Shown here piece by piece: positions 27,219 through 61,744 of a DNA stretch of 64,000 nucleotides (positions within the stretch are counted from its first letter, which is position 1; every line of letters starts with the position of its first letter). The notes beneath the pieces were generated by a model. That model did not search any database and was not told where the DNA came from. It saw only the letters and a list, made by a program, of their open reading frames with translations. The translations under genes and the position numbers were made by a program. Location: IMG/VR virus record IMGVR_UViG_3300033049_000066, positions 124,001-188,000 of that record; one strand, written 5' to 3'.

Positions 27219-27220
27219 AA

Positions 27221-29887: not shown

Positions 29888-29898
29888 ATACTGAATAA

Positions 29899-29985: not shown

Positions 29986-29991
29986 AACAAT

Positions 29992-30088: not shown

Positions 30089-30127
30089 ATTTAAAAGTGT
30101 ACTTAGGGGTGGTTGAATGTGCAAAGG

Positions 30128-30201
30128 GGCGACTTTAGCTTAATGGTAAAGCCCTCGGTTGTGATCCGAAAAGATGCGAGTTCGAATCTTCGTAGGTCGC
30201 C
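30128..30201 (+). tRNA. tRNA-His(GTG) inside a 34-bp flanking stem
   Basis: G-1:C73; ttGTGat; no CCA. Confidence 0.85.
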
Positions 30202-30262
30202 CCTTTGCGCATTCAACCACCCCTAAGTACATTTACGTTACAACACATGATAAATACTTACT

Positions 30263-30484
30263 ATGAAAGCAAATGAAATTATGCACGAAAGAACTAGTAA
30301 CCGCATTAAGGTACAAATGCACGAATACGGACCTATTGGTAATCGAAAATATTCATTAGTGGATATGCGAACTCGTAAGACACGAGCTACATCGTTCAAC
30401 GGACAGTTTGAGGCGAAAGCATACGCAAACAAAAGGAATTGGTTTATTAGCCCCGTTAATATAATCGAACCCGTTTCCAATTAA
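30263..30484 (+). CDS. Small putative internal virion protein
   Basis: MKANEIMHE; ATAAATA upstream. Confidence 0.6.
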   Translation: MKANEIMHERTSNRIKVQMHEYGPIGNRKYSLVDMRTRKTRATSFNGQFEAKAYANKRNWFISPVNIIEPVSN

Positions 30485-30574
30485 TCAAGTTAACCTAAAT
30501 ACTAGACATTAGTCCTAAACGATAGTATAATTGTACAAAGAATCATATACAATTTAACACTAACCAGGACCTCT

Positions 30575-31735
30575 ATGAAAACAAAATTCATGATCGGCGG
30601 TGATACCGTACACGTATTCAATATGAACGAAGAACTAGCGTTGGATAAACTCCCGCCACGGATCTACACCGTCCGGTTTGACCCACTACAGGGCTTTCAT
30701 CTTGGCATCACAAAAGATAAGCTTGACTTGCCTAGTAAGATTTACGGTGAGACTCCAATGCGTGTACAAAAGTGTATAGATACATATACCGATCGTACTG
30801 CATCTACCGGCATTTTATTAACCGGTGATAAAGGTACAGGCAAAACATTATTGATGTCGTTGCTTGCAAATGAAATAATTAGCAAATTAAAATTGCCAGT
30901 AATACTCATTAAAGAGGCATACGAAGGTGGTGCGTTTACAAACTTCATTGAATCCATTGGCGAATGCGCTCTTGTGTTTGACGAATTCGGGAAAATGTAT
31001 TGTCCAAATTCGAGACGCAACGAGAATGATATACCTCAAACCTCATTATTATCATTAATGGATGGGGTTGACAAAACCAAGCGTATGTTTATTTTGACTG
31101 AAAACAGCGAGCTGGACATCAACGACTTCATGCTAAATCGTCCGAGTCGCATCTACTATCACTTCAAGTACAACAAGCTTGACGAAGGCAGCGTCATCGG
31201 CTACTGCGAGGATTATAAGGTCGGCACCGAGGAGATAAGAGATATCGTAGATCTTGCTCGGCGCTCACAGGTTTTTAGCTTCGATATGCTCCAGACTATC
31301 GTCGAGGAGCACCAGCGTTACGGTACGTCAATAGGCGAGGTTGCGGAAGATTTAAATATCGACACGCGCGAAGAACAGGGCGATATGATTGAGGTGCTAA
31401 AAATACTCGAGCGTGGCACGAAAAATGAGCGTGAGATCTATGGCACGCCGTACGTCACAAAACCTAACAGTAGCTACACGTACATCAACATCAAGGATAA
31501 TAAAATTGAAAGTTCTGAGGTTGAGATGCCAACTGCAACGGCAGTGGATAGCACTGATAGCAGCGAAGATAGCCCTGTATGCGCAAGCGAGGAAAATAAC
31601 TATCGCTCCGAGTACGTCGAGGCGAAGAACTTAGCTTACGAAAAAGATGGGCAGCTGGTTTACGAAACAGAAAAATTCACCTTCATCGCAAAAGATATGC
31701 CCAAGCTTCAAACAAATTATTTGAAATTTTTCTAG
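30575..31735 (+). CDS. AAA+ ATPase
   Basis: GDKGTGKT, LVFDEFGK, LLSLMDG, NRPSR. Confidence 0.9.
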   Translation: MKTKFMIGGDTVHVFNMNEELALDKLPPRIYTVRFDPLQGFHLGITKDKLDLPSKIYGETPMRVQKCIDTYTDRTASTGILLTGDKGTGKTLLMSLLANEIISKLKLPVILIKEAYEGGAFTNFIESIGECALVFDEFGKMYCPNSRRNENDIPQTSLLSLMDGVDKTKRMFILTENSELDINDFMLNRPSRIYYHFKYNKLDEGSVIGYCEDYKVGTEEIRDIVDLARRSQVFSFDMLQTIVEEHQRYGTSIGEVAEDLNIDTREEQGDMIEVLKILERGTKNEREIYGTPYVTKPNSSYTYINIKDNKIESSEVEMPTATAVDSTDSSEDSPVCASEENNYRSEYVEAKNLAYEKDGQLVYETEKFTFIAKDMPKLQTNYLKFF

Positions 31736-31744
31736 GTAAACGAA

Positions 31745-32137
31745 ATGCGCACTAAATTATTAATTCTTGTAACTTTAACAGCACCACTATTTTTAATTGA
31801 CTGGTCGGCCAAGGAGAAGAGTTCCGGTGGTGAGGTCGACGCACTTTACTGGCACGGAGGGAGTCGCTACACCGTGAAGGACGACAATGGGGGCCTGATC
31901 ACAAGCAGAACGATACCGCCCTGGGGTAGTCCACACAACGGCAATGTCATTGTGTACAGTGATCTTGCTCCGGGAGAAAAAACTTGGTATCTCTGTGAGT
32001 GGGATTGGAGTTGGATGTACGGCACGATGGGTGGGGATGCGAATTGTGAAATTCACATTCACGGACTAGATGATATCATCCCCGGTAATTGGGATCATGG
32101 CAAATTTGGCAGAGGGTCAATCACACGCATAGAATAA
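31745..32137 (+). CDS. Membrane-anchored hypothetical protein
   Basis: Hydrophobic N-terminus; WDHGKFGRG. Confidence 0.65.
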   Translation: MRTKLLILVTLTAPLFLIDWSAKEKSSGGEVDALYWHGGSRYTVKDDNGGLITSRTIPPWGSPHNGNVIVYSDLAPGEKTWYLCEWDWSWMYGTMGGDANCEIHIHGLDDIIPGNWDHGKFGRGSITRIE

Positions 32138-32157
32138 AATATCGCCAAAAAGAATAC

Positions 32158-32233
32158 AGTGACATAGCTCAATTGGCAGAGCACGAAGCTCATAACTTCG
32201 AAGACGCAGGATCGTTGCCTGCTGTCACTACCA
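32158..32233 (+). tRNA. tRNA-Met(CAT)
   Basis: AGTGACA/TGTCACT; ctCATaa; CCA. Confidence 0.88.
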
Positions 32234-32270
32234 GACACTGAACAAATAGCAGTTAACTGCAGGAGGTAAC

Positions 32271-32747
32271 ATGTTCACCGTAGATGAAAAAACAGAAATA
32301 GTACAGTACTTAAAAGATATGCCCGCGAATTCCTCAGTGTATATCGGTTCTGACTCCGTGAAATACAAACGCAAGGGGTTATGGTACGCTCGGTACAACG
32401 TAGCATTCATTGTCCACATTGCATCAAAGCACGGTGGTAAGATTTTTCACACTACATCTGTCGAACGTGATTACGATCCTAAGAAGGAAAAGCCTCGTAT
32501 GCGACTAATGACCGAAGTATACAAAGCCGTAGGTGTTTACATGGAATTCGCGGAGGTACTTGAAGATTTACCTGTCGAAATCCACATCGATGTTAATTCA
32601 GATGAGAAGCACAACTCCAGCATCGTGCTGCGAGAAGCACTTGGCTACATCAAAGGAATGACCGGACTAGATGGAGTGCCTAAGCCAGATGCCTGGGCCG
32701 CATCGACGGTTAGTGATTACGGTGCCAGAGGGAAATTTACACACTAA
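32271..32747 (+). CDS. RNase H-like YkuK-family protein
   Basis: VYIGSDS, RLMTEV, EIHIDVN, KPDAWAAS..SD. Confidence 0.85.
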   Translation: MFTVDEKTEIVQYLKDMPANSSVYIGSDSVKYKRKGLWYARYNVAFIVHIASKHGGKIFHTTSVERDYDPKKEKPRMRLMTEVYKAVGVYMEFAEVLEDLPVEIHIDVNSDEKHNSSIVLREALGYIKGMTGLDGVPKPDAWAASTVSDYGARGKFTH

Positions 32748-32776
32748 GGATTCAATCGCGCAAGGATGCGCATTTT

Positions 32777-32852
32777 GCCGTCGTAGCTCAGTTGGTAGAG
32801 CGCAGACCTGGTACGTCTGAGGTCATCGGTTCAACCCCGATCGTCGGCTCCA
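32777..32852 (+). tRNA. tRNA-Thr(GGT)
   Basis: CAGAC-ctGGTac-GTCTG; CCA. Confidence 0.9.
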
Positions 32853-32892
32853 ATTTTAGATGCATTATAATGCTCGTATGATAAATACCGTT

Positions 32893-33876
32893 ATGCCAAG
32901 ACATAAAAAAATCGCGCAAAGACATGCGAAAATTCTTAATATACAGAATCCCGCAACAGGGAAATTTGAGTTAGATAAAATTAAAACAAAATACGATAGA
33001 ATCCTTAAATACTCATTTGCGGAAATATATATTATAGACGCTGGAACTATGAAGTTCACCGAAGTCAGCGCAAACGCACTGCGGAACCTCGGCTACACGC
33101 TGGCGGAGATGCAGAAGATGAAGGCTGGTGACGTCGCACCTCAGCTTTCTGCCGGGCAATGTAACAAGATTTTTGTTGCGTTGAACAGTGGGGAAAATGA
33201 GGTCGCGAAGATGAAAACAGTTATTTTGCGCAAAGATGGATCAGAGTACAAAGTTAATCTTCGCGTACAGTACGCGAGTGGTGAAGACCCAGTGTACATC
33301 ATAATGGCGTCGGACATCACAGAACGTGACAGGTACGAAGCTGAGTTAAAAGCCCTTGCCTTCCGAGACCCCGGCACAGATTTGTACAATAGACGGTACT
33401 TCTTAGAACACCTTAGGGGAACGATAAACCATGCTAACAGAATGCACTCTCCTATTGGATTAATTTTAATCGACATGGATGATTTTAGTAAGGTCAATAA
33501 CAATTACGGACACATCGCTGGTGACAAGGTAATCTCAGATTTTGCAAATAAGATATGCGATGTATTTTCAAGGAAGACAGACGTCGTAGCAAGATACGGT
33601 GGGGATGAATTTGTAGTGCTGTGTATCGACAATTCCGCTGAAACATTAATCGCAAAATGTAACCAGCTTATAGCTCGACTAAACAAAGCATTGTACTACG
33701 ACGGTCACACAATTGTCCAAACCGCAAGCATAGGCATTTGCCACTACAACGCGAATGCTATAACAATCTCAACTGAGGATCTTATTAACGGTGCTGACAT
33801 TGCTATGTACAAGGCCAAGGCAGCTGGTAAAAATCAAGTCAAAATATGTAACAACGACGACCTCAATGAGGATTAA
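32893..33876 (+). CDS. PAS-GGDEF diguanylate cyclase
   Basis: PAS (..RKDGS..DITE), NRRYF, IDMDDF..VNN.YGH.AGD, RKTD I-site, RYGGDEF; start placed after ATAAATA. Confidence 0.92.
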   Translation: MPRHKKIAQRHAKILNIQNPATGKFELDKIKTKYDRILKYSFAEIYIIDAGTMKFTEVSANALRNLGYTLAEMQKMKAGDVAPQLSAGQCNKIFVALNSGENEVAKMKTVILRKDGSEYKVNLRVQYASGEDPVYIIMASDITERDRYEAELKALAFRDPGTDLYNRRYFLEHLRGTINHANRMHSPIGLILIDMDDFSKVNNNYGHIAGDKVISDFANKICDVFSRKTDVVARYGGDEFVVLCIDNSAETLIAKCNQLIARLNKALYYDGHTIVQTASIGICHYNANAITISTEDLINGADIAMYKAKAAGKNQVKICNNDDLNED

Positions 33877-33894
33877 TGGCAATAATATTTAGGA

Positions 33895-34205
33895 ATTACT
33901 ATTTGAAGCTAAAGTAGGTTATCACGGACAAGGGTGCAAATCCCTTCATTTCCACCAAAAGCATCTTTTTACAAGGGTTCTTTTGGGGGATGATTTCAGA
34001 TTCGACGTGGGACTGAGGATAAGTGGATAGTACGGCAACGCAGAAGTCGTGACACTTGAAGAAGCAAACTTAAAATAATCGCAAACGATTCATTTTACAC
34101 TGAGGAATTAATGGCTGCGTAAAGCGCCACCCTCTGAGGTTGAAACAGCCTTATAACCAGCTTGTTAGTCGTGCCCTATTGACGAATGAACACAATGTAG
34201 GGGAC
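33895..34205 (+). ncRNA. ssrA: Circularly permuted (two-piece) tmRNA; tag ANDSFYTEELMAA*; outer boundaries approximate
   Basis: T arm + CATTTCC-ACCA (ends 33957) lies upstream of GGGGATG...GATTCGAC (33986); tag at 34081-34122. Confidence 0.88.
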
Positions 34206-34216
34206 GCGATACTTTT

Positions 34217-34290
34217 GACTCTATAGCATAATGGCAGTGCGAGGGATTGCAAATCCTTAGATCCCGATTCGACTTCGGGTAGAGTCTCCA
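34217..34290 (+). tRNA. tRNA-Cys(GCA)
   Basis: GACTCTA/TAGAGTC; ttGCAaa; U73-CCA. Confidence 0.9.
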
Positions 34291-46428: not shown

Positions 46429-47508
46429 ATGCAGATGATGAAAAAACAATACGATTTAGTCGTTTATATCGGCAGATTTCAACCAAGACACAACGGCCAC
46501 CGCGAAACAGAGCGGATAGCGTCGACATTAGCAGATAATGTGCTAATACTAATCGGGTCCGCAAATGGGCCTCGCACTACACGAAACCCCTGGACATACA
46601 AAGAACGTGCTGCTGAAATCCGCGAGGATTCCGAAGTCATGAATCTCATGATCGACGGATTAGATGATTACACGTACAATAATAACAAGTGGGTACAGCA
46701 AGTTGGTGAGAAAGTTCAACGTGCGATCGACAAGGTTATTGAAATTGATTTATACACTTCTTCACCGGATTCGCTCAGCAAAGGTGACACCGTTAACGTC
46801 GCAATTGTAGGGCATGATAAAGATCACACTAGTGATTATCTAAACAATTTCCCCCAGTGGGATTACATCGAAGTTCCAGCATATCCTTCAAGCACTGATA
46901 GAATTGATTCCACTAAAATTAGACAGCTAATGTTCAGTGGACAATTGTCATTTATTGACGGGGTGGTTCCGGGCAGTCAAGTCCGTGATTTTACAAAGTC
47001 CAAGGAATTTGCAGGATTACTTGACGAATGGAACTACATCGCAGAATATAAAAAAGCTGCTAGCGCCGCACCGTACGAAACGATCTACACAACCGTAGAC
47101 GCTGTCGTTGAACAAAGTGGGCACGTTCTGCTCGTTCAACGAGGCAGTTTCCCCGGCAAAGGCTTGTGGGCAATGCCCGGTGGATTTATTAATCCCAAGG
47201 AAAGAATTGTAGATGGCATTATTCGTGAACTACGTGAAGAAACAAAACTTAAAGTACCCGAGAAAGTACTGCGAGGATCAATCACGCACCGAGACGTTTT
47301 TGACGATGTCGAGCGTTCGACACGTGGGCGCACAATTACTCACACTGCGTTAATCCAATTAGATAATGCATCCTCATTACCAAAAGTGAAAGGAAGTGAC
47401 GATGCGATGAATGCCAAGTGGTTCTCACTTGCAGAGTTTGAAACAATGAAAAATATCATGTTCGAAGATCACTATTCGATTATAAAAAATATGCTGAGTA
47501 GAGCATAA
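46429..47508 (+). CDS. nadM: Bifunctional NMN adenylyltransferase / Nudix ADP-ribose pyrophosphatase (NadM-Nudix)
   Basis: YIGRFQPRHNGH, RNPW, STKIR; Nudix PGG..RELREET; RGRTIT; GSDDA. Confidence 0.92.
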   Translation: MQMMKKQYDLVVYIGRFQPRHNGHRETERIASTLADNVLILIGSANGPRTTRNPWTYKERAAEIREDSEVMNLMIDGLDDYTYNNNKWVQQVGEKVQRAIDKVIEIDLYTSSPDSLSKGDTVNVAIVGHDKDHTSDYLNNFPQWDYIEVPAYPSSTDRIDSTKIRQLMFSGQLSFIDGVVPGSQVRDFTKSKEFAGLLDEWNYIAEYKKAASAAPYETIYTTVDAVVEQSGHVLLVQRGSFPGKGLWAMPGGFINPKERIVDGIIRELREETKLKVPEKVLRGSITHRDVFDDVERSTRGRTITHTALIQLDNASSLPKVKGSDDAMNAKWFSLAEFETMKNIMFEDHYSIIKNMLSRA

Positions 47509-47538
47509 ACTATTGCGCGGAGTGCGCAGGAGAAAAGT

Positions 47539-47853
47539 ATGAAAATTATAGCAACCACAACCGAGAAGAACTTTTTAGTAGAAGCTACTGAATCTGAACT
47601 TATGACATTAGTTGGTCTCTCAAATACTAATAATGCACGGTCACAAGATTTTAAACATAGTCGGTTACGAGTTAATGGCGAAATTGATGTTAGTAAATTC
47701 GCCAAGACCGCATCTTATGTTCGGAGGATGGATGAGCAGAATTTACAAAGAATTAAGGAGTTTCTAACGGGCGCCATCGATAATATCGATGAGGCTACTG
47801 ACACTGTAAACAAAATAAACTTATTTGACATGTTAGGTGATGAAGATGAATAG
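47539..47853 (+). CDS. Hypothetical protein
   Basis: AGGAG RBS. Confidence 0.65.
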   Translation: MKIIATTTEKNFLVEATESELMTLVGLSNTNNARSQDFKHSRLRVNGEIDVSKFAKTASYVRRMDEQNLQRIKEFLTGAIDNIDEATDTVNKINLFDMLGDEDE

Positions 47854-48769
47854 CCTACTACTCGCTCACTGGTACGCACCAGAGGCGGTGAAAGAAATGG
47901 CCGACTACGTTGGTGACAGTCTCGGACTGATACAAGAAGCGCAAAGGATCAACCCTGAGAGGCTAGTATTTGCTGGGGTGAAGTTCATGGGAGAAACAGC
48001 GAAGGTTATGCTCCCTGATACTACTGTCGTTATGCCGGATATCAACGCAACGTGTTCTCTTGTTACGCAAACTAACATAGAGGATTTATATGCCTGGGAT
48101 TCCGCAAATCGAGAGACCGCTAAGAAAAATGGGCGGGACGTTACTCACATTATGTACATAAACAGTTCTGTTGATATGAAGGCAGTTGCTGACATTATTG
48201 TTACATCAGCAAATGTAAATGCGGTGGTTGAGGATGAGATCGCCAAGGGCAATAAAGTCATTTTTAGCCCTGACAAAAACATGGGCAAATACATCAACCA
48301 AGAATTTAATTATGATATGACCGTGTTCTCGTCAGTTTGCGAAGTTCACGACGCATTTAACATTAACCAGCTTAACGAAGATATGGGTGGGTGGACGGAT
48401 GGTAGCAAATTCTTAGTGGCACATCCTGAGAGTCCAATTGAGGTATTAAACAAAGCTGATTTTGTAGGCAGTACTAACAAAATGCTACAGTGGATTATTG
48501 ATTTCCCGTACAAGGTAGGCACGATTTGGGTAGCGACTGAAGCCGGACTCTTGTTTGATATGAAAAAGGCGCGGCCCGGGCTTGACATTAGGCCGGTATC
48601 CGCGTATAATGGATGTATGTGCAATGAATGTCCTTATATGAAATTAAACACCATAGACGCGGTACAGCAAGCAATAAATGGTGCCAGCGGTACTGTTATT
48701 GATTATTTAACAGATGAGCAATTGGAAGCGGCACGTAAACCAATTGAACGTATGTTAATTCTTAACTAA
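47846..48769 (+). CDS. nadA: Quinolinate synthase
   Basis: LAHWY, GDSL, GVKFMGET, TCSL, YINSS, TSAN, CEVH, AHPE, GST, TE, ECPYMK. Confidence 0.93.
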   Translation: MNSLLLAHWYAPEAVKEMADYVGDSLGLIQEAQRINPERLVFAGVKFMGETAKVMLPDTTVVMPDINATCSLVTQTNIEDLYAWDSANRETAKKNGRDVTHIMYINSSVDMKAVADIIVTSANVNAVVEDEIAKGNKVIFSPDKNMGKYINQEFNYDMTVFSSVCEVHDAFNINQLNEDMGGWTDGSKFLVAHPESPIEVLNKADFVGSTNKMLQWIIDFPYKVGTIWVATEAGLLFDMKKARPGLDIRPVSAYNGCMCNECPYMKLNTIDAVQQAINGASGTVIDYLTDEQLEAARKPIERMLILN

Positions 48770-48786
48770 AATAGAGGAGCTCTATT

Positions 48787-50253
48787 ATGAACAAAATACA
48801 AAACATGTTCGCACCACAAGCGAACGACATAGCATACACAGAAGATAAGAAATTAAACATTAGCTTGATATGCAGAATTGACAGCTATAAATTTTCGCAT
48901 CCGTTTGCCTATCCGAACGATATAAACATTGATGGGATGACCTCATACGGTGAGACCCGCGTGTCACCAAAAGATACAATCGTTCCATTTGGTATGCAAA
49001 TGCTTCTTAAGCGTTATCTTACTCAGACAATTACAATGGCTGACATTGACGCGGCTGAGGATTTTAGCACCGCACATTTCGGCAGGACACTGTTTGATCG
49101 CAGTGCGTGGGAAAAAGTTGTCCGTGAATACGCTGGCAAGCTCCCGCTGATAATCAGAGCGGTTCCGGAAGGAACAGTCATGAATGGTAGCCAGCCCATC
49201 TACTCAGTTACAGTGCTAGACAGAGATTTGTTCTGGATGAGTGCCGGCTTTGAAACGCTCATCCAACGCGCGATTTGGTACCCGACGACGATTGCCACGA
49301 TGGATTACATCGTGCGCAATGAGATGGAAGCGTTCTACGATAAGACAGGGGCTGACAAATCTTTGCTCCCGTTCGCCCTGCATGATTTTGGAGGACGTGG
49401 GGTGAGCAGTGCGGAAACCGCCGAGATTGGTGGCGCCGCGCATCTTGTTAATTTTCTAGGCAGTGACACGGTCGAGGGCGTTCTTGCTGCGAATTTCTAC
49501 TACAAGGAAGAAATGAGCGGGTTCAGCGTGTACGCTACGGAGCATGCCATACAGTGTTCCTTCGGTAGCGGGACAGATGACGCGCTACGCTATCTTAGAC
49601 GACAGCTACGCAATGCCCCGCCGGGTTCCGTCGTAAGCATTGTTATTGACGGTTACGACGTGTATCGTGAAGCAAATCTACTATGCACCGTGATGAAGGA
49701 TGAGATTATCGCCAGCAAGGCAAAGGTCGTGTTCCGGCCGGACAGTGGGGACATGATGGAAATTATCCCTCGCTTGCTATTGATGCAATCAGAAGCATTC
49801 GGTACTACAAAAACTGCCGAGGGCTACTTACAAATAAATTATGTCGGGCTCATCCAAGGGGATGGAATTGACAGAGCGATTATTAGCGAGGTCTTGGATT
49901 TAGTTACGTTCTTGGGCTTTGCGGCTGATACGGTGATGTTCGGCAGTGGAGGCGCTTTGCTACAAAAAGTGAATCGTGACACGCTGAAATTCGCACAGAA
50001 GGCCTGCGCTATTCTCGTGGATGGTGAGTGGGTTGGTATCGCAAAAGACCCAATTACCGATCACGGTAAGAAGTCCAAGGAAGGGGTATTGACTCTCGCA
50101 AGAAATATCGAGAGTGGTGAGCTAACGACGGCGCGGTTAGACCAGGGGTCGTTGCCGGCGGGGATGGAAGACGCGATGAAGCTCGTGTACTTCAAAGGGG
50201 ATTTGTTCAATGAAATTACATTCGCAGAGGTCAGAAAAAATGTTATCAAGTAA
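48787..50253 (+). CDS. nadV: Nicotinamide phosphoribosyltransferase (Nampt)
   Basis: DSYKFSH, LHDFGGRG, GSDT, ATEH, RPDSGD, QGDG, FGSGGALLQ..NRDT, KDPITD..KKSK. Confidence 0.95.
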   Translation: MNKIQNMFAPQANDIAYTEDKKLNISLICRIDSYKFSHPFAYPNDINIDGMTSYGETRVSPKDTIVPFGMQMLLKRYLTQTITMADIDAAEDFSTAHFGRTLFDRSAWEKVVREYAGKLPLIIRAVPEGTVMNGSQPIYSVTVLDRDLFWMSAGFETLIQRAIWYPTTIATMDYIVRNEMEAFYDKTGADKSLLPFALHDFGGRGVSSAETAEIGGAAHLVNFLGSDTVEGVLAANFYYKEEMSGFSVYATEHAIQCSFGSGTDDALRYLRRQLRNAPPGSVVSIVIDGYDVYREANLLCTVMKDEIIASKAKVVFRPDSGDMMEIIPRLLLMQSEAFGTTKTAEGYLQINYVGLIQGDGIDRAIISEVLDLVTFLGFAADTVMFGSGGALLQKVNRDTLKFAQKACAILVDGEWVGIAKDPITDHGKKSKEGVLTLARNIESGELTTARLDQGSLPAGMEDAMKLVYFKGDLFNEITFAEVRKNVIK

Positions 50254-53235: not shown

Positions 53236-53320
53236 GTAAAAATATGAAATTAACGAAACAAAGAGACATAGGCGATCTTAAGCCATGGCCTTGGTAATTA
53301 ATCAGGAAATAGGTAAAAAT

Positions 53321-53617
53321 ATGAAATTAGCGACGGATGGAGATGGGTTTTTAATTGATCGCACTGACTGGACTGCTGAGGTTATGCTAGAGCTAGCTAA
53401 ACAGAGCGAAATTGAAATAACTGACGACGTACAGGTCCTGGTGACGCAGGTGAGGCAAATGTACGAAGATGATGGCGTGGTACCTGCATTGCGTGTTTTT
53501 AGCAAGGCTACAGGTGGTGATCGCAAAGGAACGCACTTAAATCAGATTTTTGACGGTGGTCCCATGAAAAAACTGGCGAAAATCGCTGGATTGCCCAAGC
53601 CAACTGGCTGCGTGTAA
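53321..53617 (+). CDS. TusE/DsrC-family sulfur-relay protein
   Basis: TDGDGFL..DW..; F.GGP.K..AKIAGLPKPTGCV. Confidence 0.9.
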   Translation: MKLATDGDGFLIDRTDWTAEVMLELAKQSEIEITDDVQVLVTQVRQMYEDDGVVPALRVFSKATGGDRKGTHLNQIFDGGPMKKLAKIAGLPKPTGCV

Positions 53618-55482: not shown

Positions 55483-56058
55483 ATGACACAAGTATACTTT
55501 AATTCAGATTTGCACCTCGGCCATAGAAACGTCATCACGTTCCATGACAATTTTCGTGCCAAGTGCATGGGTGTTGAAACTATCGAGCAGCATGATGAGA
55601 TGATCTTTGACCTCTGGACGGACCGAGTAAGGAAGCGTGACGTTATCTACATATTAGGTGATGTTGGGTACCAGCTCGATCGTCTAACAGCCTTGCCCGG
55701 GCGAAAAATCTTAATGCTCGGCAATCACGATAAATCCCCCGCTAGCGAATATTTAAAAATATTTGACAATATCATTGGCCCAATCAAGTACAAGAAGCAC
55801 TGGCTAAGTCATTTCCCAGTACACGAAAGTGAGCTATGGGGGAAGAAGGTAATTTGTGGTCACACCCATTCAACCGGACTCAATGATGATCGATATATAA
55901 ATGTTTGCGTGGAAATGACCGGTGGGGTGCCAGTAAATTATCAGGATATTGTAAGTGGTAAGTACGTGACTTGGAACCGGGTTAATTATCCATATGGCGT
56001 AGTAGACAACTCAGTTAATCATAACCCGGACGCGAGTAAGGCAGATTCAAGTGACTGA
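55483..56058 (+). CDS. Calcineurin-like metallophosphoesterase
   Basis: SDLHLGH, LGD, GNHD, SH, GHTH. Confidence 0.9.
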   Translation: MTQVYFNSDLHLGHRNVITFHDNFRAKCMGVETIEQHDEMIFDLWTDRVRKRDVIYILGDVGYQLDRLTALPGRKILMLGNHDKSPASEYLKIFDNIIGPIKYKKHWLSHFPVHESELWGKKVICGHTHSTGLNDDRYINVCVEMTGGVPVNYQDIVSGKYVTWNRVNYPYGVVDNSVNHNPDASKADSSD

Positions 56059-56705
56059 CCACGCGATGCCGTAATATACCCAAATCCTAAATCTCTAAAA
56101 GTTTTACCAACATCAGCCTTGGTAAAATACGGTACTTGCCTAACAGTCCCGATGGTTAAAAAATTCTGGTTATTTTTACAATATTTGTATATAACATTTT
56201 GTGATATTTTATAAGGACATCCGGTCATAATTGCAGACATTGATGTAAAATATCCCCAGGGCGTTTTCCAATATCCATCGAACGACGAATGGGTATTTCC
56301 GGTCAACGCTTTGGATATCTTTTTACGCACTGCCAATCGCTTTGCTGGATTTTGAAGGCCTTTCATTGAAGTATAGTCTCGATTCATATTGTGGTGATTG
56401 TGATATTTTCCACCAGGTGATATATTATACCCATTATTTTTCGTGTTGTATTCGGTTATTAGTAAACGTTCAGCTACGTTAAGATAATCATAATCAAAAG
56501 ACACAAATAAAACTTCATGTATCCAATCATCGCTACCATACTTTTCAATAGCATTATGAAATTTTCCATTCTTCTTAAACGCGGATTTGGCATCTCTACA
56601 ATGTTCGGCAAATCGGACAGTTATTCCTTGCCGAGTAAGTCCAATATACGCTTTTCTAGTAGTTTTACTAGTGTGTTTATAAACTATATATTTAGATTTA
56701 TTCAT
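56019..56705 (-). CDS. Free-standing GIY-YIG homing endonuclease
   Basis: IVYKHT..KAYIGLT..RF..H..E..GYN; ATAAATA upstream. Confidence 0.85.
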   Translation of the reverse strand: MNKSKYIVYKHTSKTTRKAYIGLTRQGITVRFAEHCRDAKSAFKKNGKFHNAIEKYGSDDWIHEVLFVSFDYDYLNVAERLLITEYNTKNNGYNISPGGKYHNHHNMNRDYTSMKGLQNPAKRLAVRKKISKALTGNTHSSFDGYWKTPWGYFTSMSAIMTGCPYKISQNVIYKYCKNNQNFLTIGTVRQVPYFTKADVGKTFRDLGFGYITASRGQSLESALLASGL

Positions 56706-56924
56706 AATAATATTTATGACGGGCATACACACTCTGCCAGAATATAGTAATCGAAATAGTAGGCCTAAGTATATAATCGTGTTATAATTAACCTAAGAGT
56801 GGTAAATTCACAACACACGACAAAGTTAATAAGAAATTTGAAGATATTGTCTGGGATTTACCAAAAAGGTAGACATTATAATTAAGTAGTGTTATAATTT
56901 AATAAATCAAAAAGGAATCAAGTA

Positions 56925-57701
56925 ATGAATAAATTAGCAATCGCAGTATCCGCTGCCTTAGTTCTTAGCACATCACCAGTAATTGCCGGGGATGAGACAA
57001 TTATGTTTGAAATTGGTGTTGGTTTTGGAACATCCATTAAGGTTACAAAAACAAAGGAACAACTTGCGAATAAATTCAATCGGATGTTTTGCTATCACAG
57101 ACCTTCCGACACTCCAATATATGGTGCTGTCCGCTACCGATACGACAATGTCGAAGCACACGTAGGTGGCTGGTTAGTAGGCGCTGACAGTGCGAGATGT
57201 GATCGTGATTCATACGCTGTTGGGGTCGGCTACGTTTTTGACACACAGGATCACAGCGGTGAAGCATCAATTGATGATTTTTACGCTACGTACACCCCCG
57301 GCATTGCGTATACTTGGGGACGAAACAAAGAATTTAATATTCAAGATAATACCAACACCAACTGGCGTCTGAAGGATAACTTTCAATTTTACAATCGCGT
57401 AGCAATCGGCGGTGGCAATGAAAGTACTACGGGTGAGATAGGCATTGTGCGATACGGTAACCCAATTGGTGACTACGAGCGTACAGGCGAAACTTTCGTA
57501 ACGATTAGCGCAGGTTTCCGTGACTATGATGGTACTAGTGGTAGTGGTGCGGGCGCAACGGATCCAGGAGACGACGCTGGAATTATAAACACTATCAACA
57601 TTGTCGATAATACAAATACAGTTGATGGTCCGCTGAGTGAAGTAACAATCAACAATGCCGATGTTGCAGGTCAGGCAAATAACGGCAATTTTGACTTTTA
57701 A
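56925..57701 (+). CDS. Secreted, possibly outer-membrane beta-barrel protein
   Basis: Signal peptide; alternating beta strands (FEIGVGFG, YAVGVGYVF); terminal F. Confidence 0.55.
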   Translation: MNKLAIAVSAALVLSTSPVIAGDETIMFEIGVGFGTSIKVTKTKEQLANKFNRMFCYHRPSDTPIYGAVRYRYDNVEAHVGGWLVGADSARCDRDSYAVGVGYVFDTQDHSGEASIDDFYATYTPGIAYTWGRNKEFNIQDNTNTNWRLKDNFQFYNRVAIGGGNESTTGEIGIVRYGNPIGDYERTGETFVTISAGFRDYDGTSGSGAGATDPGDDAGIINTINIVDNTNTVDGPLSEVTINNADVAGQANNGNFDF

Positions 57702-57721
57702 GTAATCACCAGGAAATAACC

Positions 57722-58417
57722 ATGAAACAATTAGTATTAGCATTAGCATTGTTCTCTGCTTCTATAAACACAAGTGCAGTAACATTTAACGAAACGACTA
57801 ACGCTCGGCTCGATACCGAGTTTTTAATTAGCGGGGAGATCACTCACGTTGATACCACAACCAATCTCGAATGGTTAGATTTTGGGTCACACGATGGATC
57901 GCACGTTACATTTGGACAGTCTGTCAAAAATGCTCAAGTAAACTACGGTAGCCAGGGGTTTCGTCTTGCGACGGAGACTGAGGTTAGAAATTTATTTACA
58001 TTCTTCTTCACTGATTTTGTAGATAGTGGGAATGGCACAATGACCGTATATGAAGATCCAAGCTTGCGTTCAGTCACTGAGAGAAATAGCTGGTTACTGG
58101 CATTCGGCACTGATACAGTAACCACCGGAACAACGAACAACAACGAAACACTGTTTTCGGCAGGTATGTACAAAGATGACGATGGTACAATACAGTTAGC
58201 TGGGTTTAATCTAACATTGGAACCAACAACCGCACGTACTAAATTCTACAGTACAGAGTTCAATGTAGCAGGCGGATTAGGATCAAATGCTGGATACGAT
58301 AATCTTGGTGTGTTTATGGTGCGTGATTATGCTGTAGTACCAATATCGCCCGCAGTTTGGTTATTCGGATCAGGCTTACTTGGATTAGTAGCAATAGCAA
58401 GACGTCATGAAGCATAA
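57722..58417 (+). CDS. VPLPA/PEP-CTERM sorting-domain surface protein
   Basis: Signal peptide; DTTTNLEWLD, GFRLAT.TEV; VPISPAVWLFGSGLLGLVAIARR. Confidence 0.88.
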   Translation: MKQLVLALALFSASINTSAVTFNETTNARLDTEFLISGEITHVDTTTNLEWLDFGSHDGSHVTFGQSVKNAQVNYGSQGFRLATETEVRNLFTFFFTDFVDSGNGTMTVYEDPSLRSVTERNSWLLAFGTDTVTTGTTNNNETLFSAGMYKDDDGTIQLAGFNLTLEPTTARTKFYSTEFNVAGGLGSNAGYDNLGVFMVRDYAVVPISPAVWLFGSGLLGLVAIARRHEA

Positions 58418-58461
58418 TAGAAGTACAAAGATCAACAACCAATAATCAAAGGAAATTAAAA

Positions 58462-59106
58462 ATGAAAAATTCACTAATAGCAATCACAGCAGCAACTCTC
58501 GCAGTATCATCACAGGCCGGTGCGGCTACCCTCGACTTCGTAACGATGGCAGATGGTGCCGAAGGTGCTTTCACTACCCTCTTTGTCCCATCCTCTGTAG
58601 ATCTAAGCGTTACTGCCGGCAGTGGCAGTCCACTAAAAGCACTCGTCTATTTAGATGAAGGTGCCGGTCTTGGGGTGTGTACATCAGTAAATTCCAGTAA
58701 TCAATGTGATCCGAAAGATGGTGACGACATTGCTGGGTTAGATACACTCAGACTAAGTTTTGATACTGAAGTAACTCTTAATAGTGTATCAATGCTAAAC
58801 GGTTATCATCAGTCTGAACTAGGATACCAAACCAGTTCGTACGATGTTTTCACTGCCGACTATTCATTGTCAGTTGATGGCGGAATGGTAAGTACCGGCA
58901 ATCTTGCAGATCTCGTACAACTAAATCTAGTTGGTCGCAATTTTGAATTCGGTGTCGTTGCTGGTGGTGAGGCCGCTTCGCAGCGTTATTATATCTCAGG
59001 ATTAGAGTACAATGAAATATCACAAGTGCCAATTCCAGCCTCTGTTTGGTTGTTCGGGTCTGGATTGCTTGGGGTAATGGCAGTAGCAAGACGTCGTAAA
59101 GCATAA
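58462..59106 (+). CDS. VPLPA/PEP-CTERM sorting-domain surface protein
   Basis: Signal peptide; VPIPASVWLFGSGLLGVMAVARRRKA. Confidence 0.9.
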   Translation: MKNSLIAITAATLAVSSQAGAATLDFVTMADGAEGAFTTLFVPSSVDLSVTAGSGSPLKALVYLDEGAGLGVCTSVNSSNQCDPKDGDDIAGLDTLRLSFDTEVTLNSVSMLNGYHQSELGYQTSSYDVFTADYSLSVDGGMVSTGNLADLVQLNLVGRNFEFGVVAGGEAASQRYYISGLEYNEISQVPIPASVWLFGSGLLGVMAVARRRKA

Positions 59107-59130
59107 CGGAAAGTACAAAGATCATCAAAC

Positions 59131-59153
59131 AGCACTCTAAGGAGTGCTTTTTT
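59131..59153 (+). terminator. Intrinsic terminator
   Basis: AGCACTC-taag-GAGTGCT + U-tract. Confidence 0.8.
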
Positions 59154-59243
59154 ATGGCAAAATAAATGTAATTAGCATTTGACCTTTGGCGCTAGTTGTC
59201 ATATAATATATATTATAGTTAGTAAAAGGCAAAAGCAACGATT

Positions 59244-59693
59244 ATGAATACAGCACAAAACACATTCAATCTATTAAAGTACGATATTCGTGTTGACAAA
59301 GATGGTAGCACGAGATGGTACATAAATGGCAGATTACACAGAGATGATGGCCCAGCTGTTGAGTTCGCAAGCGGTGGCAGAGCGTGGTACCAAAATGGCA
59401 GAAGACATAGAGATGATGGACCAGCTGTTGAATACGCGAGCAGTGACAAATTTTGGTACAAAGACGGCAAAAGACATAGAGATGATGGGCCAGCTATTGA
59501 ATTCGCAGGCGGCACGAATCATTGGTACAAAGACGGAAAGTTACACAGAGAAGATGGGCCTGCTATTGAACTCGCGATTGGCGCGAATCATTGGTACCAA
59601 AATGGCAAATTACATAGAGAAGATGGCCCGGCGGTTGAATCCGCAGATGGCGAAAAACAGTGGTACTTAAATGGGAAGGAAGTAACCAAATGA
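59244..59693 (+). CDS. HR(E/D)DGPA-repeat protein
   Basis: Promoter 59179-59207; MNTAQNTFNLLK. Confidence 0.85.
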   Translation: MNTAQNTFNLLKYDIRVDKDGSTRWYINGRLHRDDGPAVEFASGGRAWYQNGRRHRDDGPAVEYASSDKFWYKDGKRHRDDGPAIEFAGGTNHWYKDGKLHREDGPAIELAIGANHWYQNGKLHREDGPAVESADGEKQWYLNGKEVTK

Positions 59694-60154
59694 GTACAGC
59701 ACAAGCGACCTTTGATGGGTTAAAATCTAGAATAACCGTAGACGATGATGGTGGCGCAAGATGGTACTCCGGGCTAGTATTACACAGAATAGGTGGGCCA
59801 GCAATTGAGCTAGCAAATGGTGGCAGGTACTGGTACATAAATGGTGAATTACACAGAGAAGATGGCCCGGCTATTACGTACGCAAATGGCACAACTCAAT
59901 GGTACCGGCATGGCAGATTACACAGAGAAAATGGTCCAGCTATTGAACGACTAACCGGCAGCAAGCACTGGTACATAAATGGCGTGAGACACAGGGAAGA
60001 TGGCCCGGCCGCTATGTACGAAAGTGGTGATCAATATTGGTACATAAATGGTGAGCTGCACAGAGAAGATGGGCCAGCTATTGAATTCGCGAATAGTGAC
60101 CAATATTGGTACAGAAACGGCAAGATAATAGACAAGCCTTTGGATATTTGCTAA
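59690..60154 (+). CDS. HR(E/D)DGPA-repeat protein
   Basis: ATGA-coupled; MSTAQATFDGLK. Confidence 0.85.
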   Translation: MSTAQATFDGLKSRITVDDDGGARWYSGLVLHRIGGPAIELANGGRYWYINGELHREDGPAITYANGTTQWYRHGRLHRENGPAIERLTGSKHWYINGVRHREDGPAAMYESGDQYWYINGELHREDGPAIEFANSDQYWYRNGKIIDKPLDIC

Positions 60155-60384
60155 CTTATTGATTTATATAGGATTCTAGCATTTATTAAAACAGAGTAAT
60201 ATATTGGTAAGTCGTTGAAATATATAAGAATAGTGGTTTTTACCGGCGTTTTTAAACGGCATTCACGTATCAGTACCAGTAAACATATCAAAACCGCCCT
60301 AAAATAATCGCAATTAGAGGTTGACCTTTGGCGCTACTTGTTATATAATGTATGTAACAGTTAGATAAAGAGCAAGGGAAGATT

Positions 60385-61221
60385 ATGAATCTAGCACAAG
60401 ACACATTCAATCGCTTAAAAACTGAAATTGTAATAGACGAATTTGGCACTAAGTATTGGTACGTCAACAGTGAATTACACAGAGAAGATGGCCCGGCTGT
60501 TGAACATTCGGATGGTAGCAAAGAATGGTACAAATCCAGAAAATTACATAGAGAAAATGGCCCAGCTGTTGAACTTACGGGCGGTGGCAAGTATTGGTAC
60601 TTAGACGGAAAACAACATAGAGATGATGGGCCTGCGGTAGAATTTACAAATGGCGGCAAAGAATGGTACAAACATGGCAAAAGACATAGAAAAGATGGGC
60701 CAGCTATTGAGTACGAGAATGGCTCCAAATTTTGGTACATAAATGATAAATTACATAGAGAAGATGGGCCAGCTATCGAGTACGCAAATGGTAACAAGCG
60801 GTGGTACATAAATGGTAAATTACACCGAGAAGATGGGCCGGCTATTGAACTTAAAAACGGTGGCAAGTACTGGTACATAAATGGAAAATTACACAGAGAA
60901 GATGGGCCAGCTATTGAATACGGGGATGGCACCCAGGCCTGGTACTTAAATGATAAATTACACAGAGATGATGGACCGGCTGTAGAATACGCAGATGGTG
61001 GCAGTGAGTGGTACCAAAATGGCAAAAGACATAGAGATGATGGTCCAGCTGTAGAACATTCAGCCGGTATACACAGAGAAGATGGGCCAGCTATTGAACG
61101 GGCAAATGGTGGCAGGTACTGGTACAAGGATGGCAAAAGACATAGAGAAAATGGACCAGCTATTGAACGGGCAAATGATGAAAAACAGTGGTACTTAAAT
61201 GGAAAGAAAGTAGACAAATGA
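60385..61221 (+). CDS. HR(E/D)DGPA-repeat protein (longest member)
   Basis: Promoter 60321-60349; about 11 repeats, one truncated. Confidence 0.85.
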   Translation: MNLAQDTFNRLKTEIVIDEFGTKYWYVNSELHREDGPAVEHSDGSKEWYKSRKLHRENGPAVELTGGGKYWYLDGKQHRDDGPAVEFTNGGKEWYKHGKRHRKDGPAIEYENGSKFWYINDKLHREDGPAIEYANGNKRWYINGKLHREDGPAIELKNGGKYWYINGKLHREDGPAIEYGDGTQAWYLNDKLHRDDGPAVEYADGGSEWYQNGKRHRDDGPAVEHSAGIHREDGPAIERANGGRYWYKDGKRHRENGPAIERANDEKQWYLNGKKVDK

Positions 61222-61598
61222 ATACCGCACAAGACATATTTGATCGCTTGAAGTACGACATTGTCACTGACAGTGCAGGCAACAAATATTGGTACTTACA
61301 CGGCAAATTACACAGAGATGATGGGCCTGCTATTGAGTACACAAATGGAACCAAGTTCTGGTACAAAAATGGCGAGAGGCACAGAGATGATGGCCCAGCG
61401 ACTATGTACCCAAATGGTGACAAGTTTTGGTACAGAAACAATAAAAGACACAGAGATGATGGCCCAGCTATTGAATACGCAGATGGTAGTAAGGAGTGGT
61501 ACATAGATAACAATTTACACAGAGAAGAGGGGCCTGCTATTGAGTACACAGCTGGCCAAAAAAAGTGGTACACGCATGGAGTAAAGGTAGACAAATGA
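61218..61598 (+). CDS. HR(E/D)DGPA-repeat protein
   Basis: ATGA-coupled; MNTAQDIFDRLK. Confidence 0.85.
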   Translation: MNTAQDIFDRLKYDIVTDSAGNKYWYLHGKLHRDDGPAIEYTNGTKFWYKNGERHRDDGPATMYPNGDKFWYRNNKRHRDDGPAIEYADGSKEWYIDNNLHREEGPAIEYTAGQKKWYTHGVKVDK

Positions 61599-61744
61599 GT
61601 ACATCACAAGAAACATTCGATCGCTTGAAGTATGACATTCATGTAGACGCAAACGGCAAAAAGGTTTGGTACAAGAATGGCGTACGGCACAGAGAGGATG
61701 ACCTGGCGATTGAAGAAGCAAGTGAACTCGCCAGCAAATCATAG
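61595..61744 (+). pseudogene. Truncated HR(E/D)DGPA-repeat gene
   Basis: MSTSQETFDRLKYDI..RHREDDLAIE..*; a single degenerate repeat. Confidence 0.65.

What the first reader, a model, noticed from the sequence alone, without database searches (positions are those of the whole stretch)
56869..59153. Phage operon of VPLPA/PEP-CTERM surface proteins
Seen: promoter, a putative outer-membrane protein, two proteins with signal peptide + VP(I)xxxVWLFGSGLLG..RR tails, then a terminator. Both CTERM genes are followed by similar DNA (GCATAA..AAGTACAAAGATCA), so the tail module was duplicated. Known: these tails are processed by host exosortase in EPS-producing Gram-negatives. No exosortase is in the window. 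Inference: the phage remodels the host surface, for example for superinfection exclusion or aggregation.
Basis: partly seen in the sequence, partly recalled or inferred. Interest (0 to 1): 0.6.

Follow-up and report, generated by a model that had tools for sequence, protein, structure and literature searches.

The report
Phage cassette of exosortase-sorted surface proteins
A jumbo marine phage carries a small, self-contained gene cassette for an outer-membrane barrel protein and two secreted proteins whose C-terminal tails match the signal read by a bacterial exosortase that the phage itself lacks, so it probably uses the host's own sorting machinery to re-dress the infected cell's surface.

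Summary
A near-consensus sigma-70 promoter (56870-56898) is followed by three genes with ribosome-binding sites: p1 56925-57701, p2 57722-58417 and p3 58462-59106. An intrinsic terminator follows at 59131-59148.

- **p1** is predicted to fold as an 8-stranded outer-membrane beta-barrel. Its family was found only on phage contigs.
- **p2** has a C-type-lectin-like ectodomain.
- **p3** is a small beta-sandwich protein.
- **Tails:** p2 and p3 end in VPLPA-CTERM-type tails, the only two in the 293-kb virus record. The record has no exosortase.

The region is not host contamination. The window lies in a jumbo myovirus with a T4-type capsid. The same cassette, p1 plus one to three CTERM genes, recurs in other phage contigs at different genomic positions.

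Chromosomal homologues of p2 and p3, and identical tail types, occur in uncultured sulfur-oxidising Gammaproteobacteria. All four such genomes tested encode the VPLPA-specific exosortase XrtD.

The last ~82 coding bases plus ~35 non-coding bases of p2 and p3 are a 119-nt duplicate. This looks like recombination between tails that both proteins already had.

No RNA data exist and the host is unknown. I rate this a new variant of a known kind.

The parts
56870..56898 (+). Sigma-70-type promoter (TAGACA, 17 nt, TATAAT, with a TG extended -10) of the cassette
   Evidence: One search gives 11 of 12 matches. One search shows this promoter class is 73:7 biased to the coding strand of the record, against 1-10 in shuffles.
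56925..57701 (+). p1: secreted 258-aa protein. It has a conserved ~180-aa predicted 8-stranded outer-membrane beta-barrel and a variable, disordered C-terminal extension (residues ~203-258).
   Evidence: ORF. AlphaFold2 model with 8 strands, mean pLDDT 68. Foldseek matches to OmpA, OmpW, OprF, NspA, OmpX, PagL and Ail at probability 1.00, and to phage-encoded barrel proteins. The family has 30 clusters among 1.84 billion representatives. Every context examined was a phage contig. No match in 401 sampled gammaproteobacterial genomes.
57722..58417 (+). p2: secreted 231-aa protein with a C-type-lectin-like ectodomain (residues ~30-205) and a VPLPA-CTERM-type tail (residues 206-231, bases 58337-58417)
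   Evidence: ORF. Model pLDDT 88. The VIA-align list is dominated by C-type-lectin folds at Z 5-7.1. 52 homologues found; 42 of the 47 aligned match TIGR03370. Chromosomal homologue in Ca. Thiodiazotropha endolucinida, 29% identity, E 1e-13.
58462..59106 (+). p3: secreted 214-aa beta-sandwich protein with a VPLPA-CTERM-type tail (residues 189-214, bases 59026-59106)
   Evidence: ORF. TIGR03370 24.8 and 26.3 bits. Phage homologues at 34% identity, E 3e-33 and 9e-30. Chromosomal homologue in a Thiohalobacter MAG, 38% identity, E 1e-38. Atlas look-alikes are small PEP-CTERM proteins.
58336..58453 (+). Copy 1 of the duplicated 3' module (p2 tail-coding end plus ~35 nt of 3' flank, including the AAGTACAAAGATCA motif at 58421-58434)
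59025..59143 (+). Copy 2 of the duplicated 3' module (p3 tail-coding end plus 3' flank, motif at 59111-59124)
59131..59154 (+). Intrinsic terminator (7-bp stem, 4-nt loop, T-run) closing the unit
   Evidence: The next promoter lies at 59179-59207.
56019..56732 (-). GIY-YIG homing endonuclease gene abutting the cassette on the opposite strand; a possible agent of the cassette's mobility
   Evidence: PHROG homing-endonuclease matches, E 3e-24. A related cassette (L098) also has a GIY-YIG gene nearby. The link to mobility is inference.

Best explanation
This is a mobile, moron-like cassette of a jumbo myovirus. Host sigma-70 RNA polymerase reads it from its own strong promoter, most likely early in infection, and an intrinsic terminator closes it.

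All three products carry Sec-type signal peptides. p1 would be inserted into the host outer membrane as a small 8-stranded barrel. p2 (C-type-lectin-like fold) and p3 (beta-sandwich) would first be held in the inner membrane by their C-terminal helix. The host's VPLPA-specific exosortase (XrtD), which the phage does not encode, would then cleave them at the VP-x-P motif and pass them to the cell surface or matrix.

The phage thereby adds its own proteins to the infected cell's surface coat. The most likely pay-off is masking or altering surface receptors or matrix. That could exclude competing phages, avoid loss of progeny on debris, or change cell-cell and particle adhesion.

Shown:
- gene structure, fold predictions and tail type;
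- absence of an exosortase in the phage record;
- recurrence of the cassette in other phages at different positions;
- chromosomal homologues and XrtD in bacteria that carry the same tail type.

Inferred:
- early expression;
- actual processing by XrtD;
- surface location;
- the benefit to the phage.
For: Phage identity:
- 25 tRNA genes.
- NAMPT, NMNAT-Nudix, T4 RNA ligase 1 and a GIY-YIG endonuclease.
- A gp23-type capsid protein 68-70% identical to those of jumbo phages PA5oct, Vibrio 2.275.O and Phosso.
- One assembly contig with no differences spans the upstream phage genes and the cassette in two runs.

Transcription unit:
- Promoter and terminator.
- The promoter class is strongly biased to the coding strand.

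p1:
- 8-strand model and outer-membrane-barrel fold matches.

Tails:
- TIGR03370 scores.
- 42 of 47 p2-family members and 4 of 5 p3-family members match TIGR03370.
- The VP-x-P motif is conserved across the family, not only the hydrophobic helix.
- No exosortase in the 293-kb record.

Likely host lineages:
- The same tail type occurs in Thiotrichaceae, Thiohalobacter, Thiodiazotropha and other uncultured Gammaproteobacteria.
- 4 of 4 such genomes tested encode XrtD at 569-590 bits, against a cut-off of 400.
- Those genomes carry 3-20 tail-bearing ORFs, most of 150-300 aa.
- Homologues of p2 and p3 sit in ordinary chromosomal neighbourhoods.

Cassette recurrence and mobility:
- p1 plus 1-3 CTERM genes occurs in L003, L006, L008, L010, L098 and L099.
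- Against L003, p1 is 63% and p2 45% identical. The flanking phage genes are only 33-37% identical and lie 130 kb or more away in this genome.

Tail co-variation:
- Tails are more alike within a cassette than between cassettes (77% against 70%, permutation p 0.017, 5 cassettes).
Against: - The host is unknown, so the presence of XrtD in it is not shown.
- The p2 tail of this phage deviates from the family (VPISPA, RRHEA) and scores below the TIGR03370 cut-off. p3 is borderline.
- No expression data exist.
- Exosortase cleavage and the surface destination of such proteins are poorly established biochemically even in bacteria (my knowledge; Haft et al. 2006, PMC1569441, is a genomic inference).
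- Distant p1 relatives occur in phages without CTERM genes, so p1 and the CTERM proteins need not act together.
- The p1 model has only moderate confidence (pLDDT 68).
- Nothing here discriminates exclusion from adhesion or other roles.
Confidence: 0.65

Rival explanations
1. The tails serve only as plain C-terminal membrane anchors. p2 and p3 are inner-membrane-tethered periplasmic proteins that act without exosortase processing, for example as periplasmic exclusion factors like T4 Imm or Sp.
For: p2's tail is below the TIGR03370 cut-off and p3's is borderline. There is no exosortase in the phage. The host is unknown.
Against: The VP-x-P motif preceding the helix is conserved in all but a few of more than 50 phage homologues, and 42 of 47 match the sorting-domain model. 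A plain anchor would not need this motif. Chromosomal homologues with the same tail live in genomes with XrtD.
Confidence: 0.15
2. The cassette interferes with the host's exosortase pathway. Abundant phage substrates would saturate XrtD or displace host matrix proteins. This would loosen flocs or biofilm so that infected cells or progeny disperse.
For: The cassette has a strong promoter and one to three substrates per cassette. p3 has weak similarity to the floc protein PepA. PEP-CTERM proteins are needed for floc formation in Zoogloea and Aquincola (cited in PMC12642866 ref. 37; PMC9850573).
Against: The folded ectodomains are conserved, which argues that they have a function of their own and are not mere decoys. 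There is no direct evidence.
Confidence: 0.12
3. The region is host DNA joined to phage DNA by mis-assembly, or the genes are decaying passengers without function.
For: Homologues of p2 and p3 exist in bacterial chromosomes. The repeat-rich genes just downstream break short-read assemblies.
Against: - One contig spans the upstream phage genes through the terminator in two runs, with uniform depth.
- The cassette recurs in at least six other phage contigs.
- GC content equals that of the surroundings.
- The promoter belongs to the phage's own class.
- The ORFs are intact with conserved residues across 24-52 homologues.
Confidence: 0.02
4. p2, with its C-type-lectin fold, is a virion receptor-binding or diversity-generating-retroelement target protein like Mtd or TvpA.
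For: The fold list includes Mtd, TvpA and TaqVP.
Against: - No reverse transcriptase in the record.
- No template repeat of the p2 gene anywhere in the record.
- The signal peptide and membrane tail are incompatible with cytoplasmic virion assembly.
- The cassette lies in the early, promoter-dense region about 67 kb from the capsid gene.
Confidence: 0.02

Closest known systems
VPLPA-CTERM proteins with exosortase D (XrtD; NCBIfam TIGR03370 and TIGR04152), a branch of the PEP-CTERM/exosortase system (Haft et al. 2006, PMC1569441)
   Same: Signal peptide, small ectodomain, and a C-terminal VP-x-P motif followed by a hydrophobic helix and a basic cluster. The best-scoring sorting-domain model is TIGR03370. 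Close chromosomal homologues lie in XrtD-bearing genomes.
   Different: The genes are encoded by a virus that has no exosortase. There are only two substrates per genome. p2's tail is below the curated cut-off and p3's is borderline.
Phage morons encoding envelope proteins: lambda Lom (8-stranded Ail/Lom barrel) and Bor, T5 Llp, phi80/N15 Cor
   Same: A self-contained unit with its own promoter and terminator, in variable positions between phages. It makes outer-membrane or surface proteins that are not virion parts. p1 has the same fold class as Lom.
   Different: There is no sequence relationship. p1 matched no Pfam, NCBIfam or PHROG family. The unit is carried by a jumbo myovirus (none of whose genes examined here indicates lysogeny) rather than expressed from a prophage. 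It is coupled to substrates of a host sorting enzyme, which none of these known morons use.
Floc and matrix PEP-CTERM proteins (Zoogloea PepA, NF033554; XDP1, NF041927)
   Same: Small secreted beta-rich proteins with an exosortase tail. p3 gives weak partial matches (E 3e-8 and 7e-7).
   Different: Scores of 34 and 29 bits are far below the cut-offs of 80 and 125 bits, so p3 is not a member. Part of the match is the tail itself.
Bacterial C-type-lectin-fold surface domains (Legionella Lcl C-terminal domain/DUF1566, invasin/intimin tip domains, Bdellovibrio Bd2740 C-terminal domain)
   Same: The predicted fold of the p2 ectodomain, and the context of a surface-exposed binding domain.
   Different: The similarity is at fold level only (Z 5.7-7.1, sequence identity 6-15%), with no Pfam match. 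The ligand is unknown.

Membership tests
VPLPA-CTERM sorting domain (TIGR03370) | HMM score at or above the curated cut-off (25.35 bits) | tested here: inconclusive
   p3 scores 24.8 bits by hmmscan and 26.3 bits in the six-frame search. p2 scores 16.6 and 19.0 bits. 42 of 47 p2-family members match at E <= 0.001, best 1e-8.
VPLPA-CTERM sorting domain (TIGR03370) | Located at the extreme C-terminus: motif, then a hydrophobic helix, then a basic cluster, on a protein with an N-terminal signal peptide | tested here: met
   Sequences. The model predicts a helix at residues 210-230 of p2. Signal peptides were judged by inspection only.
VPLPA-CTERM sorting domain (TIGR03370) | Co-occurrence with exosortase D (TIGR04152) in the same genome | tested here: not met
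   There is no exosortase in the 293-kb virus record. The feature is met in 4 of 4 bacterial genomes that carry the same tail type. The phage's own host is unknown.
PEP-CTERM domain (PF07589 / TIGR02595) | HMM score above the gathering cut-off | tested here: not met
   p3 scores 17.4 bits against 20.7 for PF07589 and 13.2 against 16 for TIGR02595. p2 has no match. The relationship is at superfamily level only.
Flocculation protein PepA (NF033554) and XDP1 (NF041927) | Full-length equivalog score above the cut-off | tested here: not met
   p3 scores 33.7 against 80 bits and 29.4 against 125 bits.
Small 8-stranded outer-membrane beta-barrels (OmpA N-terminal domain, OmpX/Ail/Lom, OmpW, PagL) | Eight antiparallel strands forming a closed barrel, after a signal peptide | tested here: met
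   Eight strands in the model. Foldseek probability 1.00 to these barrels, target-normalised TM 0.5-0.6, and to phage barrel proteins. The model's pLDDT is only 68.
Small 8-stranded outer-membrane beta-barrels (OmpA N-terminal domain, OmpX/Ail/Lom, OmpW, PagL) | Sequence membership in a described family (Pfam, NCBIfam, PHROG) | tested here: not met
   No match. The PDB profile search found nothing.
Phage moron | Own promoter and terminator; present or absent, and differently placed, among related phages; not needed for virion or replication | tested here: met
   Promoter and terminator. Different contexts. L098 also has a terminator and promoter directly upstream. Dispensability was not tested.
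Diversity-generating retroelement target (C-type-lectin variable protein) | Reverse transcriptase and a template repeat near the target gene | tested here: not met
   No RVT_1 match in the record. No second copy of the p2 ectodomain-coding DNA.

The most novel reading that the evidence does not exclude
These would be the first viral substrates of the exosortase pathway. A family of marine jumbo phages exchanges a cassette whose proteins are addressed to the host's XrtD. The tails track host XrtD specificity, since they co-vary within each phage. The tail type could therefore serve as a host-range marker pointing to XrtD-bearing, probably sulfur-oxidising, Gammaproteobacteria. A bolder extension is that the phage-only barrel p1 is the outer-membrane partner that lets exosortase cargo reach the surface. 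That step is unknown even in bacteria.
Probability: 0.45. Interest if true: 0.72.

Novelty: new variant of a known kind. Interest (0 to 1): 0.6.

Why it matters
Exosortase/PEP-CTERM systems are widespread in environmental Gram-negative bacteria. How cargo is cleaved, modified and moved to the surface is still poorly understood.

Phage-borne, compact, fast-evolving substrates offer a natural minimal test set for that pathway. They would also show a new way for viruses to rewrite the host surface by borrowing a host sorting enzyme. The consequences could include phage-phage competition and aggregation or sinking of marine sulfur-oxidising bacteria.

The tail could also be a sequence-only clue to hosts of uncultured phages. 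I found no paper describing such proteins in tailed phages. None of the three proteins has a match in 50,697 deposited phage genomes.

Tried and rejected
- **Host contamination or chimera:** rejected (and the synteny).
- **DGR target:** rejected. There is no reverse transcriptase and no template repeat.
- **Membership in PepA, XDP1 or generic PEP-CTERM:** scores are below the cut-offs.
- **Deposited phage genomes:** no DNA match and no match for p1, p2 or p3.
- **p3 homologues:** the word-based protein search found only the tail. Homologues were found instead by reading the neighbours of p2 homologues and in a Thiohalobacter MAG.
- **p2 fold:** Foldseek against PDB found nothing. VIA-align gave the C-type-lectin list.
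- **Atlas fold library:** not installed.
- **Expression:** no RNA run holds the region. The contigs laid can show only presence.
- **The 14-nt post-stop motif as an RNA structure:** it is single-stranded in both folds, and its role is unexplained.
- **TGTTATAAT as a phage-wide motif:** only 3 copies in the window, not significant.
- **p1 in bacteria:** not found in the 401 sampled gammaproteobacterial genomes. This is a sample, not proof of absence.
- **Literature on XrtD:** nothing is held in the paper library. The XrtD-VPLPA pairing rests on the NCBIfam model name and my own knowledge.
- I re-ran it from the locus files.
- **Host naming:** not possible beyond lineage-level hints.
Full report
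**What is there**

The window is bases 124001-188000 of a 293,278-bp IMG/VR virus record, estimated 83% complete. Between 56869 and 59153 there are three same-strand ORFs with good ribosome-binding sites:
- p1, 56925-57701, 258 aa;
- p2, 57722-58417, 231 aa;
- p3, 58462-59106, 214 aa.

A near-consensus sigma-70 promoter lies at 56870-56898 (TAGACA, 17 nt, TATAAT, with a TG extension). A 7-bp stem plus T-run terminator lies at 59131-59148. The promoter is not a chance match. Sites with at least 11 of 12 consensus positions occur 73 times on the coding strand of the record, 7 times on the other strand, and 1-10 times in shuffles. Thirty-three of them lie in this window. The cassette is therefore a separate unit inside a promoter-dense region read by host RNA polymerase. 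By analogy with other large lytic phages this is the early region (inference).

**It is phage DNA**

- The window has 25 tRNA genes.
- It encodes NAMPT, an NMNAT-Nudix fusion, NadA, T4-type RNA ligase 1 and a GIY-YIG homing endonuclease.
- The record encodes a gp23-type capsid protein 68-70% identical to those of jumbo phages Phosso, Vibrio 2.275.O and PA5oct.
- GC content is uniform across the region.
- In two seawater-metagenome runs a single 5.5-kb assembly contig with no differences covers the upstream phage genes, the cassette and the terminator. Both runs may be the source sample, so this is a consistency check rather than independent support.

**The three proteins**

p1:
- It has no Pfam, NCBIfam or PHROG match.
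- With 23 homologues it models as eight beta-strands followed by a disordered tail, mean pLDDT 68.
- Foldseek matches the 8-stranded outer-membrane barrels OmpA, OmpW, OprF, NspA, OmpX, PagL and Ail at probability 1.00. It also matches many phage-encoded barrel proteins.
- The barrel part is highly conserved, with 34 invariant positions including two cysteines. The C-terminal extension is hypervariable: proline-rich in most members and collagen-like in one.
- An exhaustive profile search of 1.84 billion representatives found only 30 clusters.
- Every context I examined is a phage contig.
- None of 401 sampled gammaproteobacterial genomes had a match.

p2:
- It models with high confidence (pLDDT 88).
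- Foldseek found nothing in PDB.
- The exhaustive VIA-align list consists almost entirely of C-type-lectin-fold domains at Z 5-7.1. These include the Bd2740 C-terminal domain, TvpA, PvdO, CD94, DEC205, InvE/invasin/intimin tips, the Lcl C-terminal domain and Mtd.
- This is a consistent assignment but only at fold level.

p3:
- The Atlas search places it among small PEP-CTERM proteins with a beta-sandwich.
- It gives only sub-threshold partial matches to PepA and XDP1.

**The tails**

Both tails have a VP-x-x-x motif, a WLFGSGLLG-type helix and an RR cluster at the very C-terminus. The best sorting-domain model is VPLPA-CTERM (TIGR03370, cut-off 25.35 bits).
- p3 scores 24.8 bits on the protein and 26.3 bits in the six-frame search.
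- p2 scores 16.6 and 19.0 bits.
- Generic PEP-CTERM models score lower.
- At family level the signal is clear. 42 of 47 p2-family members and 4 of 5 p3-family members match TIGR03370. The VP-x-P motif, not just the helix, is conserved.

These are the only two such tails in the 293-kb record. The record has no exosortase.

**Relatives and mobility**

Homologues of p1 and p2 are adjacent in several other phage contigs. p1 is always first and is followed by one to three tail-bearing proteins:
- one gene in L003 and L006;
- two genes in the window, L008/L009 and L099/L104;
- three genes in L010/L011 and L098.

Homologues of p3 are the last CTERM gene in L008, L010 and L099.

In the L003-type phages the cassette lies between an RNA ligase and a phage ribosomal-protein-S21 gene. 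In the window it lies between a GIY-YIG endonuclease and an array of repeat-protein genes. In L098 it follows its own terminator and promoter, with a GIY-YIG gene downstream.

Against L003, p1 and p2 are 63% and 45% identical. The flanking phage genes are only 33-37% identical and map to 7-47 kb of this record, not to about 181 kb where the cassette lies. The cassette therefore behaves like a moron exchanged among distantly related phages. A role for the neighbouring homing endonuclease in that exchange is inference.

Distant p1 relatives occur in other phages without CTERM genes. p1 is therefore not strictly tied to the CTERM genes.

**Link to bacteria**

The same tail type is abundant in uncultured Gammaproteobacteria, many of them from sulfur-oxidising lineages: Thiotrichaceae, Thiohalobacter, Thiodiazotropha, Thiogranum and Ca. 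Muproteobacteria.
- A Ca. Thiodiazotropha endolucinida protein is a full-length homologue of p2 (29% identity, E 1e-13).
- A Thiohalobacter MAG protein is a full-length homologue of p3 (38% identity, E 1e-38).
- Both sit among ordinary chromosomal genes.
- Four of four tail-bearing genomes tested encode the VPLPA-specific exosortase XrtD (TIGR04152) at 569-590 bits, against a cut-off of 400. They also encode XrtA-like paralogues and 3-20 tail-bearing ORFs, most of 150-300 aa, the size class of p2 and p3.
- The window also encodes a DsrC/TusE-like protein. This kind of gene is known from phages of sulfur oxidisers (my knowledge), which fits, weakly, the same host guess.

**The duplicated 3' module**

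Bases 58336-58453 and 59025-59143 align over 119 nt at 76.5% identity (E 8e-18). Within the tail-coding part, identity by codon position is:
- second positions, 26 of 27;
- first positions, 20 of 27;
- third positions, 17 of 28.

The non-coding stretch just after the stop codons contains an exact 14-mer that is unique to these two places in the record. It is predicted to be unstructured. p2 and p3 belong to different families whose members all carry tails already. I therefore read the duplicate as old recombination or gene conversion between the two 3' ends, with the flank possibly under selection for an unknown reason. Relatives do not share this flank.

Across five multi-gene cassettes, tails are more alike within a cassette (77%) than between cassettes (70%; permutation p 0.017). 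Examples are VPAPAA three times in L010 and PAAAWL three times in L098. This is suggestive of homogenisation or of common adaptation to one host enzyme, but it rests on a small sample.

**How it most likely works**

Host RNA polymerase transcribes the unit, and all three products are exported by Sec. The host BAM machinery inserts p1 into the outer membrane; with an even strand number, its variable tail would be periplasmic. p2 and p3 are held by their C-terminal helix, processed by host XrtD at the VP-x-P motif and passed to the surface or matrix.

The gene structure, fold predictions, tail type, dependence on a missing enzyme, recurrence in phages, and bacterial counterparts are shown. Expression timing, processing, location and benefit are inferred.

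Among possible benefits I rank them as follows:
1. Receptor masking or superinfection exclusion, or protection of progeny from adsorbing to debris. This is analogous to T5 Llp and lambda Lom/Cor-type functions (my knowledge).
2. Changed adhesion or aggregation.
3. Jamming of the host exosortase pathway.

Nothing here separates these three.

**Novelty**

Phage morons for envelope proteins and VPLPA/PEP-CTERM proteins are each known. Their combination, a virus encoding substrates of a host exosortase, was not found in the literature held. The only near case is one 2026 preprint noting a PEP-CTERM domain in a Dehalococcoides integrative element. None of the three proteins has a match in deposited phage genomes. 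I rate it a new variant of a known kind, of moderate to good interest.

**Limits**

- The host is not identified.
- No RNA data exist.
- The complex prediction could not be run.
- The p1 model has moderate confidence.
- The C-type-lectin assignment rests on Z scores of 5-7.
- The XrtD-VPLPA pairing rests on the NCBIfam model definition and my own knowledge, not on a paper I could read.

Noticed in passing
window 53285-53617 (+): DsrC/TusE-like protein (PF04358, E 3e-25). Its C-terminus keeps only the last of the two DsrC cysteines. This is a sulfur-metabolism-type auxiliary gene, consistent with a sulfur-oxidiser host.
   Followed up: partly
window 59244-61744 (+): Array of at least five paralogous genes built from ~23-aa repeats (MORN-like by eye; Pfam gives only weak DUF6745 matches). 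Most are preceded by a TTGACC-17-TATAAT promoter. Short-read assemblies break here, and the long antisense ORFs look like repeat artefacts.
   Followed up: partly
whole record G000; window-wide: Near-consensus sigma-70 promoters (at least 11 of 12 positions) occur 73 times on the + strand and 7 times on the - strand (shuffles 1-10). Thirty-three lie in this 64-kb window, which marks a dense host-polymerase-dependent region.
   Followed up: yes
window 58421-58434 and 59111-59124: An exact 14-mer, AAGTACAAAGATCA, lies 3-5 nt after both CTERM stop codons. It is unique in 293 kb, unstructured in RNA folds, and better conserved than the third codon positions of the tails. Its function is unknown.
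   Followed up: partly
window 18923-34290: 25 tRNA genes interspersed with small ORFs.
   Followed up: no
window 46429-50253: NAD cluster: an NMNAT-Nudix fusion, quinolinate synthase NadA and NAMPT side by side. By my recollection (not checked here), NadA is an unusual addition to the usual phage NAD-salvage pair.
   Followed up: no
window 56019-56732 (-); L098:4142-4858 (-): GIY-YIG homing endonuclease genes lie next to the cassette in two otherwise different phage contexts. They may drive its spread.
   Followed up: partly
window 56780-56788 and 56890-56898: The extended -10 string TGTTATAAT occurs twice in the intergenic region upstream of p1, which may indicate tandem promoters. The window has only 3 copies, which is not significant on its own.
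   Followed up: yes
L003:10711-11623 and L003:17981-20711: Related phages carry a ribosomal protein S21 gene directly after the cassette. It is followed by a secreted 220-aa protein with CxxCH motifs (multihaem-cytochrome-like, faint Pfam matches). A PrkA/DUF444(/SpoVR) set lies further on.
   Followed up: no
L010:6766-7752: The p1 homologue of this phage has a long collagen-like Gly-x-y run in its variable C-terminal extension.
   Followed up: no
L100:3180-4061; L101:6001-6906: Distant p1-family barrels occur in other phage contigs next to DUF3135, thymidylate synthase, DHFR, PhoH and ribonucleotide reductase genes, without CTERM genes.
   Followed up: partly
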